22,514 bases of DNA from Octopus sinensis (Eukaryota), in assembly GCF_006345805.1 (NCBI RefSeq), contig NW_021836788.1, forward strand, positions 1-22,514. Reading direction: 5' to 3'. The notes beneath the pieces are model-generated. The model was given only the letters and a program-made list of their open reading frames with translations, ran no database searches and was not told the DNA's origin. Below, in pieces: positions 1 through 19,390 of this stretch (its first letter is position 1; each line of letters starts with the position of its first letter). A program made the translations under genes and the position numbers.

Positions 1-53
1 AGCCATAAAATGGAATTACAAATTCTAGTAGTGGTAGAAATAAAAAAAGGGTA

Positions 54-105
54 ATGGGCCTATAGGTCATCCTTCAGGCATTTTTGCTCCTTCATCAGCA
101 GCCAT
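54..105 (-). ncRNA. Degenerate type I hammerhead ribozyme
   Basis: Minus strand CTGATGA-AGG...CCT-GAAG. A15.1 is G, and stems I and III are decayed relative to the copy at 1615-1666. Confidence 0.6.
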
Positions 106-123
106 CCGACATCCATGAGCTCA

Positions 124-519
124 TCTTTATATATAAAAGTGAGGTTGTGTGCTGTCTGTCTCCTACGATTTAGATTCCTAACTACTCCCACATTTTGCGG
201 TGCAGTGTAACCAAAACCGGGTATCTTATAGTCGTGATTCATATCGAGCCCTTCTGGGTATTAGCGTGCGTCTACAATGAGTCTACGATTTTAAAAAGAA
301 TTTACCATCAATTTTTCCCATTTTTAATGCATTTTTGGTATATATAAGGGAAGTAACTCGCTAAAAATTTATTATTAAATCTCAGAACGTAAAAAGTTAC
401 AGTAACACCCCCCCTTTGTGGTTAGCCATATTGAGATGGCTATTATACTTTACATCTCTAAAAATGCTTATGTAGTTATTTCCCTTACAAACCCGAGCAA
501 CGCCGGGTGATACTGCTAG
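124..519 (+). mobile_element. Non-autonomous Helitron (396 bp)
   Basis: 5' TC at 124 after A123. GC-rich hairpin CCCGAGC-AAC-GCCGGG at 492-507. 3' CTAG at 516-519 followed by T520. No TSD; removing it restores colinearity with the paralogous repeat. Confidence 0.9.
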
Positions 520-612
520 TTGCTTATACAACCACTGCATACAACAGTGTAACGTTATTGGTTGTATCAATTTACATATTAAACACTTTCCTAGACCTGG
601 CATGTAAATATT

Positions 613-759
613 CTTTTCTACTCTAGACACAAGGCCTGAAATTTTGGGGGAGAGGGGCTAGTCAATTAGATCGACCCCAGTACACAACTGGTACTTAATT
701 TATCGACCCTGAAAGGATGAACGGCAAAGTCGACCTCGGTGGAATTTTAACTCACTTGT
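613..759 (-). mobile_element. 5'-truncated SINE (family containing GGGGTCGATAAATTAAGTACCAGT)
   Basis: Matches 7745-7830 in reverse. TSD GTAAATATT at 604-612 and 762-770. Confidence 0.85.
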
Positions 760-780
760 ACGTAAATATTAATGACTTTC

Positions 781-969
781 ATCTTCGATCTCATTGTTTG
801 TTTACATCTGACATCTTGGATATGAAACGTCGTAACAAAAATCAGTGCTGGTTATAATTTCTCTAGAAAACCTGTAGAGATGATCTTAACAAGTGATGTT
901 AGAGCACTGCTAACACAGTAAATTGTGGTATTAATGTATAAAAACCTTTAATTTTCTTTATAGTATATT
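781..969 (+). repeat. Second half of a 413-bp repeat unit
   Basis: Aligns to 1681-1867 (CAGTGCTGG...CTAGAAAACCTGTAGAGATGATCTTAACAAGTGAT...AGAGCACTGCTAACACAGTA). Confidence 0.9.
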
Positions 970-1197
970 ATGGCATATTTCGGTCATGTTATGCGGAGAA
1001 AATCCCTGGAGAAGGACATCATGCTTGGAATGGTCAGTGGCAAGAGAGGAAGAGGCCGACCAAGAACCCGCTGGCTTGACACCATCAAGAGGGATACCGG
1101 AACGGACATAGCCAGTCTGAAAGAAGCGGCCCAGGATAGAACTGACTGGATGACACTCATCCAACAAGTAACCGAGAGTCGAATTCGACTGAGCGGA
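970..1197 (+). mobile_element. 3' end of an RTE-clade LINE ORF (BovB-like C-terminus)
   Basis: YFGHVMRRKSLEKDIMLGMVSGKRGRGRPRTRWLDTIK...DRTDW...VTESRIRLSG is the typical RTE C-terminus. A (TA)n tract follows. Confidence 0.9.
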
Positions 1198-1221
1198 TAT
1201 ATACATATATGTATATATATA

Positions 1222-1272
<51 letters not shown>

Positions 1273-1454
1273 GGAATGGTCAGTGGCAAGAGAGGAAGAG
1301 GCCCCGACCAAGAACCCGCTGCTTGACACCATCAAGAGTGATACCGGAATGGACATAGCCAATCTGAAAGAAGCTGCCAAGGATAGAACTGACTGGAGCA
1401 CACTGATCCAATGGTAACCGAGAGTTGACTTCGACTGAGCGGATAGATAGATAG
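1273..1454 (+). mobile_element. Second, frameshifted RTE 3' fragment with (GATA)n tail
   Basis: Direct paralog of 1027-1197 with small indels. Ends CGACTGAGCGGA-TAGATAGATAG, with the stop codon inside the tail. Confidence 0.88.
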
Positions 1455-1614
1455 ATGGTTGCATAACGAAATACCGTGTCCCTACAAGTCATTAATGCTT
1501 ATGGACCAGCTTCCAGGAATGTTTAATAGGTAAAATTGGTGCTTCCAATAATGTTGCACCACTGTATTTAGAGGGTCATTTAAGCAATGTGTTCGTGGAT
1601 GGTTAATGGGTTGG

Positions 1615-1666
1615 ATGGGTGCTGAGGAAGGAGCAAAACTTCCTGAAATATGGCATATACACCCAT
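1615..1666 (+). ncRNA. Type I hammerhead ribozyme with intact canonical core
   Basis: Stem I ATGGGTG (1615-21)/CACCCAT (1660-66); core CTGAGGA (1622-28); stem II AGGAG/TTCCT; GAA-A (1645-48); stem III ATATG-G-CATAT; triplet AUA. Predicted cleavage after 1659. Confidence 0.9.
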
Positions 1667-2026
1667 TTACTCCTTTTTTTATTTTCGATCCCATTGCTGT
1701 CTATATCTAGTGTCTCAGATACAAAACATCGTAACAAAATCAGTGCTGGTTCTAATCTCTCTAGAAAACCTGTAGAGATGATCTTAACAAGTGATTTAAG
1801 AGCACTGCTAACACAGTAGAACATGGTAGTGACTTATAAAAACGTTTGATACACTTTGCAGAACATCATGGTTGCATAACGAAATACTGTGTCCCTACAA
1901 GTCATTAATGCTTATGGACCAGCTTCCAGGAATGTTTAATATATAAAATTGGTGCATCCAATAATGTTGCACCACTGTATTTAGAGGGTCATTTAAGCAA
2001 GAGTTCGTGGATGGTGAATGGGTTGG

Positions 2027-2078
2027 ATAGTTGTCGATGAAGGAGCAAAAACTCCTGGAATATGGTATATACATCCAT
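2027..2078 (+). ncRNA. Degenerate hammerhead in the second repeat unit
   Basis: Core TCGATGA instead of CTGANGA; perfect stem II AGGAG/CTCCT; GGAA instead of GAAA; stem I disrupted. Confidence 0.7.
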
Positions 2079-2404
2079 TTCCCCTTTTTTGCAATTTTGA
2101 TCTCATTGCTGTTGTTTACGTCTGACATCTCAGATATGAACCATTGTAACAAAAATCGTGCTGTCTACAATCTAGAAAATCTGTAGAGATGACCTTAACA
2201 TGTGATTCAAGAGCACTGCTAACACAGTAGAAAATGGTATTGACTTATAAAAATGTTTGATATACTTTGTAGTAGTAGATTATGGTTGCATAACGAAATG
2301 TTGCATTCCTACAAATCATTAGTATATACACAAATATTTATATGCATATATAAATACAGACCTACATGCACAAAGATACACAGATATATATATATATATA
2401 TGTT

Positions 2405-2696
2405 AATTAATATGTGACAATTATTCAATAGTCAAGATAAAACTCTGAGTTTCAGATGCCAAAGTGGAAATCCACAACACCATCTCTTCGGTTCGTATCG
2501 GGCCATCTGAAAACGCTATGAAAAAATACCGTTATATAAGGGAAATTACTGTGTTAAAATCCGCTACTTATATAAATCAAGATTAAAATTTCATAGTAAA
2601 CATAGATAACCGAAGAGATGGTGTTGTGGATTTCCACTTCGGCATCCGAAACTCAGAGTTTTATCTTGACTATTGAATAATTGTCACATATTAATT
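2405..2696. mobile_element. Palindromic element with 89-bp inverted arms, probably a Penelope-like pseudo-LTR pair
   Basis: 2405-2493 and 2608-2696 are inverted repeats (87/89 identical). Each arm carries an HHR-like motif. Confidence 0.75.
2604..2666 (+). ncRNA. Hammerhead-like motif (U4C core variant)
   Basis: Stem I AGATAA/TTATCT; core CCGAAGA (2610-16); stem II GATG...CATC with inner GTGG/CCAC; one extra C, then GAAA (2648-51); stem III ACTC-A-GAGT; triplet GUU, site after 2660. Confidence 0.7.
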
Positions 2697-2796
2697 TACA
2701 GATAAATTTCCTCTATTTACATAATATTGAGGTCTCCTTCTTTCTTTTGTTATCTTATCATTTTTACCAATATATATATATATATATACATATATG

Positions 2797-2907: not shown

Positions 2908-3021
2908 GATTTTCTTTAAAGAATTGTTATTGAGAGATTTAGAAATAATAACATTTCTATGCATACATATAAATATATATACACCACACACACATATATA
3001 TATATGTATATATAATACTAT

Positions 3022-3059
<38 letters not shown>

Positions 3060-3451
3060 ATACACCACAACTGATCTCTAGGTCTGAAATTTTCAATCGG
3101 TTGTAAACATATGTCTAAGTACATTTTGTAGAATTGGAAAATTCTGTCTATACCTGATTAACTTGTTGATATCTTTCCAGTGTTATAATATAAGGCTAAG
3201 GAGAGTAACTCTTTTACCTTTCTTAATTTATTATTTTCTGTTTGTTGTTTTCCATTTTTAATCTTCTACATTTTTTATATGCTTCCTTCTCAACTTTGCA
3301 CATTTCTTCTGTCATTCAAATTTTAGTTTGTAAATGACATGTGGTTTGTGCCTGATGAATATTTGAGGTGTGTTTCAACATATGAAACTATTAGTAGCAC
3401 ATAAAAACACGTATTGTGTCTATTAGATAATACATATATATATATATGTAT

Positions 3452-7671: not shown

Positions 7672-8438
7672 AGGCGGCAAGCTGGCTGAAACGTTAGCAC
7701 GCCGGGCGATGTTCGTAGCCGTATTTTGTCTGCCGTTACGTTCTGAGTTCAAATTCCACCGAGGTCGACTTTGCCTTTCATCCTTTCGGGGTCGATAAAT
7801 TAAGTACCAGTCACACACTGGGGTCGAAATAATCGACTTAATCCGTCTGTCTGTTCTTGTTTGTCTCCTCTGTGTTTAGTCCCTTGTGGGTAGTAAAGAA
7901 ATAGGTATTTCGTCTGCCGTTACGTTCTGAGTTCAAATTCCGCCGAGGTCAACTTTACCTTTCATCCTTTCGGGGTCGATAAATTAAGTACCAGTTACGC
8001 ACTGGGGTCGAAATAATCGACTTAATCCGTCTGTCTGTCCTTGTTTGTCTCCTCTGTGTTTAGCCCCTTGTGGGTAGTAAAGAAATAGGTATTTCGTCTG
8101 CCGTTACGTTCTGAGTTCAAATTCCGCCGAGGTCAACTTTACCTTTCATCCTTTCGGGGTCGATAAATTAAGTACCAGTTATGCACTGGGGTCGATATAA
8201 TCGACTTAATTCGTCTGTCTGTTCTTGTTTGTCTCCTCTGTGTTTAGCCCCTTGTGGGTAATAAAGAAATAGGTATTTCGTCTGCCGTTACGTTCTGAGT
8301 TCAAATTCTGCCGAGGTCGACTTTACCTTTCATCCTTTCGGGGTCGATAAATGAAGTACCAGTCACACACTGGGGTCGAAATAATCTGTCCTTGTTTGTC
8401 TCCTCTGTGTTTAGCCCCTTGTGGGTAGTAAAGAATTA
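7672..8438 (+). mobile_element. Family B SINE: one head plus four tandem 184-bp body units
   Basis: Head at 7672-7720. GTATTT(C/T)GTCTGCCGTTACG starts at 7721, 7905, 8089 and 8273; the last unit has an internal deletion. Confidence 0.92.
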
Positions 8439-16405: not shown

Positions 16406-16619
16406 CACACACACACACACACACAGATACATACATACATACATACACACATATATATATATATATAAGTAGGGGCAAAAGAAATAAAAAAAAGAAAAAA
16501 GTTCTAATGCCAAAATATGCCGAAAATGGACACTATGTCAATAACCATGTAATATATCACTAAAAGCACATATTTCAAAGAAAGCCGACAGAAATTTCTA
16601 AAAAATTCCGTTATTACCA

Positions 16620-16673
16620 TATCGGACCCAATTTCAGAGTTAGTTCATAAGAAACTTCTCTTCATCAGTGATA
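16620..16673 (-). ncRNA. Hammerhead-like motif in a putative Penelope-like fragment (about 16475-16760)
   Basis: Minus strand TATCA-CTGATGA-AGAG...CTCT-GAAA-TTGG-GTC-CGATA. Stem I has a first-pair mismatch and stem III is weak. Confidence 0.6.
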
Positions 16674-16786
16674 AATGCGGTAAAGAAATAAGTGAAATAC
16701 TCATACCCATGAAAGAAGCGAGCACTAAGCCACGAGCACAATTAAGTACCCCAAATATATCCAAAATAGAAACTCTCTAGCACACC

Positions 16787-16921
16787 ATACATACATACAT
16801 ACATACATACATACGTACATACATACATACTTGCCTACATACATACGTACACACATACATGCACACATACACACACATACATACATACATACATACATAC
16901 ATACATACATACATACATACA
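16787..16921. repeat. (CATA)n microsatellite
   Basis: Directly visible. Confidence 0.95.
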
Positions 16922-17147: not shown

Positions 17148-17580
17148 TTATGCAACTACAGAATTCACGAGAATTGCCCTCCAGATGACAACTGTTTATA
17201 AAAGTTGATAACATACAGTGCTAAAGTGGTAATAAAGAACAAAGTTGAACTTAGAATATATATTAGGGCAAATAAACTCACATTAAATTGATTTTATAAA
17301 CAGAAACATTCAATTCTCAGCTCTCATAAAAAAAAAAATAAAAGCGTTGTTAAAATTTATACAATTCTGCTTGAGATAAGATCTTACAAATTCAAAATTA
17401 CCTGGTCGATTGTAAATAAAGAACCACCAAAGAGGAATGGTTGCTTCAAATGAAAATGTGGTGTGATTTTTGTTTAATGAAAAATTAAGAATTTTGTTTA
17501 AAGGCAGAAATATTTTGAACAAAACAATGTTATTTTTAGCAACTTGTGTGCATAAAGTTAAGTATCTTTTATGCAAATAG
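17148..17580 (+). pseudogene. Fossil Penelope-like element GIY-YIG endonuclease
   Basis: One frame 17148-17450 reads LCNYRIHENCPPDDNCL*KLITYSAKV...IYIR...LN*FYKQKHS...FKITWSIV. After two frameshifts it continues CDFCL/NEKLRIL...ILNK...TCVHKVKYLLCK*. This follows the PLE pattern CNCR-CP-C, Y..YIG, R, WSI, CxxCLxEK, LLNK, CRH. Confidence 0.72.
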
Positions 17581-17684
17581 CAACATCTCTTTATTTTCTT
17601 CAGGCTCAGGGAGTACAAACCTTGTTTTCAAAGTGTTTAAAACAAAATTGCATACATACAAATTGCATACAAAATTGCATACAT

Positions 17685-19343
17685 GCGCAGAACTCATTGC
17701 CGAGTGCTATGCAAACATATTCACTGTTGAAAGTCAAAATGTACCATCTTCACCATCACTAACAGCAAACTCCATAACAACTATGGAATTTACACCTGCA
17801 ATGCTGCGACGTCACCTTCAAAATAAGCGCAACTATGCCTCCCCTGGTCTCGATGGAGTTACATACCTGCTTCTAAAAGTGGCAGGCACTTCCTTTTACA
17901 CCAGCTTTCTATTTTCTTCCAGTACTGTCTCAACAATGGTGCTACTCCGGAGCAGTGGAAAACTGCCAGTGTCATTCCTCTGTTCAAAAAGGATGACCGC
18001 ACATCACTGTCAACTATCGCCCAGTCAGTCTCACTAGCTGTATTGCAAAACTGATGGAATCGTGTGTCAGAGAAACACTTTGGAACTTCTGGAGCTCTCA
18101 CAGTCTCATCCGACCCTCACAATATGGATTTGTCCCTAACTCCAGCTGCAGTGACCAGCTGGTCGAGTTCCTTGAGGACATTACTCAGATCACTGACAGT
18201 GGCTCATGGGTGGATGTTGTCTACCTTGACTTTGCTAAGGCTTTCAACTCTGTGCCACACAAAAGGCTTATGGTGAAACTCTCTGCAATGGGTGTGGGGG
18301 ATGGATGACCTTTAACTGGTTGAAATCCTTCATCCTCAGCCGAAAGGAGGTAGTCACAGTTCTAGGACAGCACTCTACCCCATGAGATGTCATCGGTGTA
18401 CCACAGGGATCTGTCTTGGTCCCTCCTGTTTGTGGCATACATTAATGACATAGATGCCAATTTAAAGAATGCCACAGTATTGAAATATGCAGATGACATC
18501 AAGCTGTACCTTGAAATCAAGAGGACTGATCCTGATGTCTACAACTCTTTCCTGCAATCAGACCTAGACACAATGCAGCAATGGATCACAGACTGGCACT
18601 GAAACTGGCTGTGGACAAGTGTACCACCATGCATTTTGGGAGAAAAACCCTGCGTCCACATACTCCCTCCACAACACTGATATCAAGAATCTCTCTTGCG
18701 AGCGTGACCTAGGCATCACTGTCAGCAGTGATTTGCATTGGGACAAAGCATATCTCTAAATTGTCAAGAAGGCCGAGGGTGTCTTGGCATCACTCAGCAA
18801 GACTTTTGTTAGCCGCTCTCCAGCCATCTATTTAAAATTGTATACAGCTATGGTACGACCACACTTGGAATTCGCATCATCAGTTTGGAACCCTTATCTG
18901 CTCAGAACATTGACCTCTGGAATCTGTCCAGAGACGTGCAACCAAACGCATACCTCCATCAGACACCTACCATATTCTGAGCGCCTTGTTTCCCTGGGCA
19001 TGGATTCACTGAAGCTCCGGCGTCTGGTGACGGACTTGGTAAACCACCCACAAGGTTATCACACCACCTCACCAACACACAACACTGAACACCTTTTTGA
19101 TTTCCATGTGTCTAAACACACGTGGACATGCCTACAAAGTCAGAAAACACACGCTCCCATGACTTTCGGAAACATTTTTCACGCTCAGAGTTGCTGAAGC
19201 ATGGAATAAACTGCCTGGGTCAGTTGTTGACTGCCATGACACTGCATCCTTTAAGGCCCTCATGCTTTCCGAAATCCGCCGAAACTACACCTGATTATAT
19301 ATACACTTTAGATGAGTTGTAGTGCACCTGAGCACTGTACACA

Positions 19344-19390
<47 letters not shown>
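17685..19390 (+). pseudogene. 5'-truncated CR1/L2-type LINE reverse transcriptase with (ATT)n tail
   Basis: Motifs SPGLDGV, QYGFVP, VDVVYLDFAKAFNSVPHKRL, GVPQGSV, YADD (18486-18497), YTAMVRPHLEFASSVWNPY and RVAEAWNKLP. Multiple frameshifts and stops; terminal stop at 19292-94; tail 19344-19390. Confidence 0.93.

What the first reader, a model, noticed from the sequence alone, without database searches (positions are those of the whole stretch)
1615..1666. Fully canonical type I hammerhead ribozyme inside a satellite repeat
Seen: every core position is present (C3 U4 G5 A6 N7 G8 A9, G12 A13 A14, A15.1-U16.1, H17=A). Stem I is 7 perfect pairs, extendable by wobbles; stem II is 5 bp with a CAAAAC loop. 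Stem III ATATG-G-CATAT is near-palindromic with a 1-nt centre. Established: short or palindromic stem III is typical of metazoan type I HHRs (newt satellite 2, Penelope HHRs) that can act as double hammerheads. Inference: an active self-cleaving RNA cutting after 1659.
Basis: partly seen in the sequence, partly recalled or inferred. Interest (0 to 1): 0.92.

Follow-up and report, generated by a model that had tools for sequence, protein, structure and literature searches.

The report
Hammerhead ribozyme relic in octopus repeat
A real hammerhead self-cleaving RNA motif sits in one unit of a decaying 413-bp tandem repeat of an octopus-like genome, an ordinary example of the animal "retrozyme" repeats, and this copy is probably weak or inactive.

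Summary
It is not a chance match. None of 2000 dinucleotide shuffles gave a match as good. Among 540 permuted-core decoy descriptors, only the true hammerhead (HHR) descriptor hit the window three times.

It lies in a ~413-bp tandem repeat of about 2.6 units with 38% GC and no long ORF. A LINE 3' tail interrupts the repeat, and an inverted HHR-bearing fragment lies upstream. The LINE points to an Octopus-like genome. This matches the known metazoan non-LTR retrozymes, also called HHR satellites.

"Fully canonical" and "active" are overstated for five reasons:
- Pair 10.1-11.1 is A-U, not the conserved G-C, and the cleavage triplet is AUA.
- No Rfam hammerhead model matches, even at E<=10 on 101 nt.
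- Two substitutions specific to this copy create a register-shifted helix, AGGAAG/CUUCCU, that buries A6-A9. Its predicted probability is 0.97, against 0.001 for stem II in the HHR register.
- Both sister copies have broken cores.
- The HHR segment is no better conserved than the rest of the unit.

Verdict: a genuine hammerhead-derived motif and a new member of a known kind. It is most likely a fossil, and its activity is untested.

The parts
1615..1666 (+). Type I hammerhead motif, copy 1. The helix I extension makes it 1612-1669.
   Evidence: Sequence; descriptor hit; decoy control.
1622..1628 (+). Core box CUGAGGA (C3-A9). G at position 7 is specific to this copy.
   Evidence: Copy 2 and the inverted copy have T at this position.
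1629..1644 (+). Helix II AGGAG/TTCCT with loop CAAAAC. Pair 10.1-11.1 is A-U and the last pair is G-U.
   Evidence: A-U is kept in all 3 copies.
1625..1644 (+). Competing register-shifted hairpin: AGGAAG (1625-1630) pairs with CTTCCT (1639-1644) and sequesters A6, G7, G8 and A9.
   Evidence: It is the minimum-free-energy fold. P=0.97 against 0.001. It disappears when either copy-specific change is reverted.
1645..1647 (+). Core G12 A13 A14.
1648..1658 (+). Helix III ATAT-GGC-ATAT, near-palindromic (ATATG-G-CATAT), with A15.1-U16.1.
   Evidence: Pair probability is only about 0.2 as a monomer. A 10-bp intermolecular helix forms in the cofold.
1659..1660 (+). Predicted scissile bond, 3' of A17 (1659) and before C1.1 (1660).
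   Evidence: Follows from standard hammerhead numbering applied to the sequence. Inferred, not tested.
1455..1867 (+). Repeat unit 1 (413 bp, 38% GC, no ORF longer than 76 codons).
1868..2281 (+). Repeat unit 2 (12.7% different from unit 1). Its HHR remnant at 2027-2078 has C3>T, U4>C and A13>G, and two broken helix I pairs.
777..973 (+). Partial repeat unit 0 (matches unit positions about 223-413). It starts inside the T-rich tract that follows the HHR and abuts an inverted SINE.
2282..2321 (+). The first 40 nt of a further unit. This is the 3' end of the array.
974..1454 (+). Later insertion that splits the array: two LINE 3' tails (a 246-bp duplication, 91% identical) ending in (AT)n and (GATA)n.
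   Evidence: The translation ...GKRGRGRPRTRWLDTIKRDTG...DRTDW... is.
38..125 (-). Inverted, 5'-truncated copy of the HHR-bearing 3' part of the unit (HHR equivalent at 105-54). It keeps CTGATGA and GAA, but 15.1 is G and helices I and III are broken.
   Evidence: It scores 86.5 bits with model R1.

Best explanation
The motif is a genuine hammerhead-derived sequence. It is the type I HHR of an old ~413-bp tandem retroelement of the metazoan non-LTR retrozyme (HHR-satellite) kind, in an octopus-like cephalopod genome.

In the living family the mechanism would run as follows. This sequence of steps is inferred from the family and not shown here.
1. A multimeric transcript folds one HHR per unit, alone or as a double hammerhead through the near-palindromic helix III.
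2. Each HHR cuts 3' of A17, leaving a 2',3'-cyclic phosphate and a 5'-OH.
3. The unit-length RNA is circularised by a host tRNA ligase.
4. The circle is copied back into DNA by a Penelope-like or LINE reverse transcriptase, giving tandem insertions.

This particular locus is a fossil. It has about 2.6 diverged units, a LINE tail splits it, and a SINE abuts it. Copy 1 keeps every core nucleotide, which is what neutral decay would give in roughly one copy in three. It has also picked up two private substitutions, U7>G and loop A>C, that favour a misfold burying A6-A9. I therefore expect weak or no self-cleavage from the monomer.
For: - The motif is present and far beyond chance.
- It lies in a tandem 413-bp repeat with low GC and no ORF. 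That matches the published definition: 150-450 bp units, GC below 50%, type I HHR (PMC7229834).
- The majority consensus of the three copies is a cleaner HHR, CUGAUGA-AGGAG-CAAAAA-UUCCU-GAAA. The ancestor therefore carried the ribozyme.
- The sister copies have lost core residues.
- The HHR 52-mer differs at 10 of 52 positions between units, against 12.7% for the whole unit. The chance that 15 core nucleotides stay untouched at about 6.4% per-lineage divergence is about 0.37.
- The misfold has P=0.97 against 0.001. Reverting either private change restores stem II to P=0.41-0.57.
- A LINE tail is inserted in the array.
- LINE relatives are from Octopus bimaculoides.
- The giant squid genome is reported to hold 235 Rfam Hammerhead_1 hits (PMC6962438), so cephalopods do carry type I HHRs.
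Against: - No Rfam hammerhead model scores the motif, so membership rests on a descriptor and not on a curated model.
- There are only three copies and no compensatory change.
- No further family copies were found anywhere. The metagenome and viral scans gave only chance hits. A protein-space search with a pseudo-ORF of the repeat found nothing. There are none in 91 kb of O. bimaculoides.
- The unit RNA is not unusually self-paired (z = -0.07), unlike the "highly self-paired" circRNAs described for retrozymes.
- Nearest-neighbour folding ignores tertiary contacts and co-transcriptional folding, so the predicted misfold does not prove inactivity.
Confidence: 0.7

Rival explanations
1. One reading: copy 1 is a currently active self-cleaving ribozyme. 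It cuts after 1659 as a monomer or double hammerhead and is maintained for that function.
For: - All nucleotides required by the minimal hammerhead rule are present, and helix I is strong.
- A near-palindromic helix III allows a 10-bp intermolecular helix. The cofold of two copies is -53.4 against 2 x -20.0 kcal/mol.
- The copy 1 core could in principle pair with the copy 2 site: helix I has 7 pairs with one G-U. This is inferred.
- Mussel retrozyme HHRs that lack the archetypal loop-loop nucleotides still cleave, at kobs about 0.1 per min (PMC7229834).
Against: - Pair 10.1-11.1 is A-U instead of the highly conserved G-C (PMC4209133).
- The competing helix has P=0.97.
- Helix I runs 10 bp unbroken, so no internal loop sits where loop II could dock. 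This is read from the sequence, and the expected position is from my own knowledge.
- The neighbouring unit's core is dead.
- The HHR segment is no more conserved than its surroundings.
- There is no Rfam match.
Confidence: 0.25
2. The repeat is not a free-standing retrozyme. It is the remnant of pseudo-LTRs of a Penelope-like element (PLE), whose HHR lies near the element's 3' end.
For: - The array starts at the equivalent of about 1678. The inverted fragment ends at the equivalent of about 1686. Both fall in the T7-ATTTTC tract 15-25 nt after the cleavage site. The unit's termini therefore lie just 3' of the HHR.
- Tandem copies with an upstream inverted 5'-truncated copy are the arrangement described for PLE insertions, with HHRs in the pseudo-LTRs near the 3' end (PMC8557442).
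- A 2026 preprint derives non-LTR retrozymes from PLE pseudo-LTRs (10.64898/2026.07.22.740005).
Against: - No PLE reverse transcriptase or GIY-YIG ORF turned up in the window. Pfam on ten ORFs found only LINE RVT_1.
- PLE HHRs are usually "minimal", with a helix III of 0-2 bp, a longer helix II and G10.1-C11.1 (PMC4209133). That does not fit here.
- About 650 bp of unrelated sequence separates the inverted fragment from the array.
Confidence: 0.15
3. The motif is a chance constellation of CTGANGA, GAAA and three inverted repeats in AT-rich DNA.
For: - Three separate scans with the Rfam library (window at gathering score, 4 kb and 101 nt at E<=10) reported no hammerhead match.
- The A-U pairs at 10.1-11.1 and 15.2-16.2 are what AT-rich noise would produce.
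Against: - No match as good in 2000 shuffles.
- Decoy descriptors average 0.011 hits per window, against 3 for the true descriptor.
- The consensus of three diverged copies is a better hammerhead than any single copy.
Confidence: 0.03

Closest known systems
Metazoan non-LTR retrozymes (Cervera and de la Pena 2020, PMC7229834), e.g. the Mytilus galloprovincialis 350-390-bp repeats
   Same: Tandem units of a few hundred bp (413 here), low GC (38%), no ORF, and one type I HHR per unit on one strand. The host is a mollusc. The HHR lacks the archetypal loop 1/loop 2 nucleotides.
   Different: Only about 2.6 units, and only one has an intact core. Pair 10.1-11.1 is A-U. The unit RNA is not predicted to be unusually self-paired. 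Neither expression nor a circular RNA has been shown.
Classical HHR satellites: newt satellite 2, Schistosoma Sm-alpha, Dolichopoda pDo500 (PMC2837043)
   Same: Type I topology, a weak or palindromic helix III that permits a double hammerhead, and a location in tandem repeats.
   Different: Canonical metazoan HHRs have a helix I of about 6 bp and a helix II of about 4 bp with interacting loops, a helix III of 1-2 bp and G10.1-C11.1 (PMC4209133). Here helix I is 7-10 bp and unbroken, helix II is 5 bp, helix III is 4 bp with a triloop, and 10.1-11.1 is A-U. Rfam Hammerhead_1 does not match.
Minimal HHRs in the pseudo-LTRs of Penelope-like elements (PMC4209133, PMC8557442)
   Same: The HHR sits a few tens of nt from the unit's 3' end. 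There is a tandem array plus an inverted truncated copy. TA-rich microsatellites are nearby.
   Different: No PLE ORF in the window. No extra nucleotide between A9 and 10.1. Helix III is present. Pair 10.1-11.1 is not G-C.

Membership tests
Hammerhead ribozyme, type I (structural definition) | Conserved core: C3 U4 G5 A6 N7 G8 A9, G12 A13 A14, A15.1-U16.1, H17 | tested here: met
   Read directly. Descriptor hit.
Hammerhead ribozyme, type I (structural definition) | Three helices around the core, with helix I open (type I) | tested here: met
   Helix I has 7-10 bp, helix II 5 bp and helix III 4 bp. However, only helix I is predicted to form in the thermodynamic ensemble.
Hammerhead ribozyme, type I (structural definition) | Highly conserved G10.1-C11.1 pair (PMC4209133) | tested here: not met
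   A1629-T1644 is A-U in all three copies.
Hammerhead ribozyme, type I (structural definition) | Tertiary contact between loop II and a loop or bulge in helix I | tested here: inconclusive
   Helix I is continuous for 10 bp, so no internal loop lies at the usual distance. This cannot be judged from sequence alone.
Hammerhead ribozyme, type I (structural definition) | Site-specific self-cleavage giving a 2',3'-cyclic phosphate and a 5'-OH | not testable with these tools
   Needs in vitro transcription.
Rfam hammerhead clan (Hammerhead_1 and relatives) | Score at or above the family's gathering threshold | tested here: not met
   No hammerhead match at gathering score, nor at E<=10 on 4 kb or on 101 nt.
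Hammerhead ribozyme (comparative support) | Compensatory base changes that keep the helices | tested here: not met
   Three copies give 0 pairs with changes on both sides. The departures are broken pairs. With three sequences this test has little power.
Metazoan non-LTR retrozyme | Tandem repeat units of about 150-450 bp | tested here: met
   413-bp units, about 2.6 copies.
Metazoan non-LTR retrozyme | Low GC (<45-50%), non-coding, no LTR/PBS/PPT | tested here: met
   GC is 0.38 and 0.357, with 4-14 stop codons per frame. LTR, PBS and PPT were not searched for specifically.
Metazoan non-LTR retrozyme | A type I HHR in every unit | tested here: inconclusive
   It is present in the three-copy consensus. 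It is intact only in unit 1 and degenerate in unit 2 and in the inverted copy.
Metazoan non-LTR retrozyme | Expressed as unit-length linear and circular, highly self-paired RNA | not testable with these tools
   No expression data are available. The fold of the 413-nt unit has z = -0.07 against shuffles, which gives no support for unusual self-pairing.
Penelope-like element pseudo-LTR | Flanks a PLE ORF (reverse transcriptase plus GIY-YIG endonuclease) | tested here: not met
   Pfam on ten window ORFs found only LINE-type RVT_1 at 17997-18599. A badly decayed PLE ORF could be missed.

The most novel reading that the evidence does not exclude
Octopods may carry a lineage-specific hammerhead variant with A10.1-U11.1 and an AUA site. 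It would be invisible to the Rfam models, dispersed through the genome and still catalytically competent.

Three non-homologous motifs with these same idiosyncrasies lie in this one 22.5-kb window, at 1612-1669 (+), 3347-3401 (+) and 16614-16674 (-).

If true, model-based censuses undercount animal hammerheads, and the G10.1-C11.1 "rule" is looser in nature than assumed.
Probability: 0.2. Interest if true: 0.45.

Novelty: new member of a known kind. Interest (0 to 1): 0.28.

Why it matters
Type I hammerheads in short tandem repeats of animals have been known since 1987. They were formalised as non-LTR retrozymes in 2020, so this locus adds an instance and not a principle.

Two things give it modest value. 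First, I found no description of an octopus hammerhead or retrozyme family in the searchable literature. The only paper found that reports hammerheads in a cephalopod is the giant squid genome paper, with 235 Rfam hits. Second, this motif and two further motifs in the window escape every Rfam hammerhead model because they use A-U at 10.1-11.1. Cephalopod HHR counts made with covariance models may therefore be too low.

The locus also shows how a repeat-borne ribozyme decays. The core survives in one copy by chance, while private substitutions already favour a misfold.

Tried and rejected
1. Rfam cmscan at gathering score and at E<=10 on 4 kb and on 101 nt gave no hammerhead, twister, HDV-like or other ribozyme match on either strand.

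2. I scanned metagenome contigs and viral contigs with the family pattern GANGAAGGAGCAAAANNNCCTGRAR. The 12 loci were all chance matches with unrelated flanks.

3. I searched protein space with a pseudo-ORF that spans the unit 2 HHR region, hoping for ORF calls on other copies of the repeat. It found nothing.

4. I fetched 91 kb of Octopus bimaculoides around LINE relatives (L013-L015, L017) and one 656-bp ENA contig (L016). They hold no copy of the 413-bp unit, no descriptor hit and no hit with model R1.

5. Covariance model R1, built from the three copies, recovers only those three. The other two HHR-like motifs are not family members: one, at 16588-16690 (-), scores 11.8 bits, which is noise level.

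6. A, B and C are the three motif-bearing units: A is the 413-bp repeat unit, and B and C hold the motifs at 3347-3401 and 16614-16674. Pairwise alignments found no homology among them outside the core.

7. Covariation counting on three sequences was uninformative.

8. A literature search for quantitative data on A10.1-U11.1 variants found nothing usable. I recall from memory, not from a paper I read here, that changes at this pair lower the rate of minimal hammerheads (Ruffner et al. 1990).

9. I considered and dropped a Pol III-terminator reading of the T7 tract after the HHR, because I could not test it.

Full report
**1. What is there**

The + strand at 1615-1666 reads ATGGGTG CTGAGGA AGGAG CAAAAC TTCCT GAA ATATGGCATAT A CACCCAT. 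In hammerhead (HHR) numbering:
- Helix I is ATGGGTG/CACCCAT, 7 Watson-Crick pairs. With two G-U and one U-A it extends to 10 pairs (1612-1669).
- The core is C3 U4 G5 A6 G7 G8 A9, then G12 A13 A14.
- Helix II is AGGAG/TTCCT, with A10.1-U11.1 as its first pair, a closing G-U as its last, and loop CAAAAC.
- Helix III starts with A15.1-U16.1.
- A17 is at 1659, so the predicted cut lies between 1659 and 1660.

One detail needs correcting. A 1-nt hairpin loop is impossible, so helix III as a monomer is 4 A-U pairs with a GGC triloop.

**2. Is it more than chance?**

I wrote an RNAmotif-style type I descriptor. It requires CTGANGA, a helix II of at least 3 bp, GAAA, a helix III of at least 2 bp ending in T, H17, and a helix I of at least 4 bp.
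- In 2000 dinucleotide-preserving shuffles of the window, only 5 contained any hit. None had helices as long as those observed.
- As a control on the real, unshuffled sequence, I ran 540 descriptors whose core boxes were permuted but kept their composition. Of these, 533 gave no hit and 6 gave one. Only the true hammerhead descriptor gave three.

The motif is therefore not a chance constellation. The window is enriched in hammerhead-type motifs; the other two are described in section 7.

**3. Context**

The motif lies in a tandem repeat with a unit of about 413 bp:
- Unit 1 is 1455-1867. Unit 2 is 1868-2281 and differs from unit 1 at 12.7% of aligned positions (K2P 0.14).
- The last 197 bp of an earlier unit lie at 777-973. 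The first 40 bp of a further unit lie at 2282-2321.
- Between 973 and 1455 the array is split by two 5'-truncated LINE 3' tails. Their translation is ...GKRGRGRPRTRWLDTIKRDTG...DRTDW..., and they end in (AT)n and (GATA)n.
- An inverted SINE abuts the array's 5' end.
- A third copy of just the HHR-bearing segment lies inverted at 38-125.

The units have 36-38% GC and stop codons in every frame.

A degenerate LINE reverse transcriptase at about 17.5-19.4 kb has its closest named relatives in Octopus bimaculoides, at 77-79% amino-acid identity. The window's SINEs recur in O. bimaculoides chromosomes. The source is therefore an octopus or a close relative.

**4. How the copies compare**

Aligning the three copies of the HHR segment gives the majority consensus ...ATGGnTG CTGATGA AGGAG CAAAAA TTCCT GAA ATATGGCATAT A CACCCAT. 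This is a cleaner hammerhead, with the usual CUGAUGA box. The ancestor of the repeat therefore carried the ribozyme.

The individual copies are decaying:
- Unit 2 has C3>T, U4>C and A13>G, plus two broken helix I pairs.
- The inverted copy has G at 15.1 and broken helices I and III.
- No pair shows a compensatory change, although three sequences give that test little power.

Between units 1 and 2 the 52-nt HHR differs at 10 positions (19%), which is no less than the 12.7% for the whole unit. At about 6.4% divergence per lineage, the chance that 15 core nucleotides stay untouched is about 0.37. One intact core among three copies is what neutral decay predicts. Nothing at this locus indicates selection for activity.

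**5. Is copy 1 likely to cleave?**

Several points argue against "fully canonical" and "active".

(a) Pair 10.1-11.1 is A-U in all three copies. PMC4209133 calls G10.1-C11.1 "highly conserved" and "typical of canonical HHRs". Pair 15.2-16.2 is U-A and the site triplet is AUA, where the common natural form is C-G with GUC (the natural form is from my own knowledge). These departures probably explain why no Rfam hammerhead model reports the motif at gathering score, at E<=10 on 4 kb, or at E<=10 on 101 nt.

(b) Copy 1 carries two private substitutions, U7>G and loop A>C. They turn AGGA-AGGAG into a slippery repeat. AGGAAG (A6 to G10.2, 1625-1630) can pair perfectly with CUUCCU (1639-1644).
- ViennaRNA gives this fold -15.6 kcal/mol, against -10.0 for the hammerhead fold.
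- The shifted helix has probability 0.97, against 0.001 for stem II in the hammerhead register.
- Reverting either substitution raises the hammerhead register to 0.41-0.54. Reverting both raises it to 0.57.

(c) Helix I is unbroken for 10 bp. I see no internal loop placed to dock with loop II. This is a reading of the sequence, not a test.

(d) Helix III alone is weak, with pair probability about 0.2.

In favour of some activity:
- The minimal rule is fully met.
- Helix III is nearly palindromic. Two copies cofold at -53.4 kcal/mol against -40.0 for two monomers, with a 10-bp intermolecular helix III, as in double hammerheads.
- Mussel retrozyme HHRs without the archetypal tertiary nucleotides still cleave at about 0.1 per min (PMC7229834).
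- Nearest-neighbour models ignore tertiary and co-transcriptional effects.

My estimate is that detectable in vitro cleavage of the native copy has a probability of roughly one in three.

**6. What it is**

The features match the published definition of metazoan non-LTR retrozymes: type I HHRs in tandem units of 150-450 bp, with low GC and no LTR/PBS/PPT, found from cnidarians to molluscs and amphibians. These repeats are transcribed, self-cleaved, circularised by a tRNA ligase, and presumably copied back by a retroelement reverse transcriptase (PMC7229834).

One structural detail points to the Penelope-like connection proposed in PMC8557442 and in the preprint 10.64898/2026.07.22.740005. The array begins at the equivalent of about 1678. 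The inverted fragment ends at the equivalent of about 1686. Both fall in the T7-ATTTTC tract 15-25 nt after the cleavage site. The unit's termini therefore seem to lie just 3' of the HHR. A tandem array with an upstream inverted 5'-truncated copy is the arrangement described for PLE insertions. No PLE ORF was found in the window, so this stays an inference.

The unit RNA is not predicted to be unusually structured (z = -0.07). This differs from the reported retrozyme circles and is consistent with decay.

**7. Other hammerhead-type motifs in the window**

The descriptor also hits two other places:
- 3347-3401 (+): TGTGC CTGATGA ATAT...ATAT GAA ACTATTAGT A GCACA.
- 16674-16614 (-): TTATCA CTGATGA AGAG...CTCT GAA ATTGGGTCCGAT A TGGTAA.

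Both are single-copy in the window and share no homology with the 413-bp unit or with each other. Both fold weakly and are missed by Rfam. Both have A10.1-U11.1 and A17, like the main motif, and each sits in a 320-365-bp stretch between TA-rich microsatellites.

Given the decoy rate of about 0.011 per window, they are unlikely to be noise. I could not establish what elements they belong to. In 91 kb of O. bimaculoides sequence the descriptor finds nothing.

**8. Limits**

I could not reach the source genome or any other cephalopod assembly by DNA search. The metagenome and viral scans gave only chance hits, and the pseudo-ORF search gave nothing. Family size, family consensus and covariation therefore remain unknown, and no expression data are available.

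**9. Verdict**

The motif is a genuine type I hammerhead-derived sequence in a retrozyme-type tandem repeat, and the cleavage site is correctly predicted. It is not fully canonical, it shows no sign of being maintained, and its private substitutions predict a misfold. It is most likely a fossil copy.
- It is a new member of a known kind and of modest interest.
- The one thread worth pulling is whether octopods hold an unannotated population of A10.1-U11.1 hammerheads that covariance-model censuses miss.

Noticed in passing
window 3347-3401 (+): A second type I hammerhead descriptor hit: TGTGC|CTGATGA|ATAT..ATAT|GAA|ACTATTAGT|A|GCACA. Helix II extends to 4 bp, a bulge and 4 more bp. It has A10.1-U11.1 and A17. 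It is single-copy in the window and lies in about 365 bp between (AT)n at 2994-3059 and (TA)n at about 3425. Rfam does not see it.
   Followed up: partly
window 16614-16674 (-): A third type I hammerhead descriptor hit: TTATCA|CTGATGA|AGAG..CTCT|GAA|ATTGGGTCCGAT|A|TGGTAA. It also has A10.1-U11.1 and A17. It is single-copy and lies in about 320 bp between (TA)n at 16450-16465 and (CATA)n at 16786-16921. Three hits in 22.5 kb compare with about 0.011 expected from the decoy descriptors.
   Followed up: partly
window 974-1454 (+): Two 5'-truncated LINE 3' tails (a 246-bp duplication, 91% identical) end in (AT)n and (GATA)n. They are inserted into the 413-bp array at ATGG, so the array is older than this LINE insertion.
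   Followed up: partly
window about 17540-19360 (+): A frameshifted LINE reverse transcriptase (Pfam RVT_1). Its closest named relatives are Octopus bimaculoides proteins at 77-79% identity, which gives the likely source organism.
   Followed up: yes
window 7721-8386 (+), and 606-766 (-): A 184-bp SINE-like unit is present as a 3.6-copy tandem array at 95% identity. The same element, inverted, abuts the 5' end of the hammerhead array. A tandem arrangement is unusual for a SINE.
   Followed up: no
window 2394-2707 and 2806-2893: A 314-bp palindrome (arms 77% complementary, MITE-like) and an 88-nt foldback. The foldback scores 37 bits on Rfam MIR7723, far below that family's gathering score of 200, so it is probably just a foldback element.
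   Followed up: no
window 1674-1686 (+): A T7-ATTTTC tract 15-25 nt after the cleavage site is kept in all three copies. It coincides with the start of the array and with the end of the inverted fragment, so it probably marks the unit's termini.
   Followed up: partly
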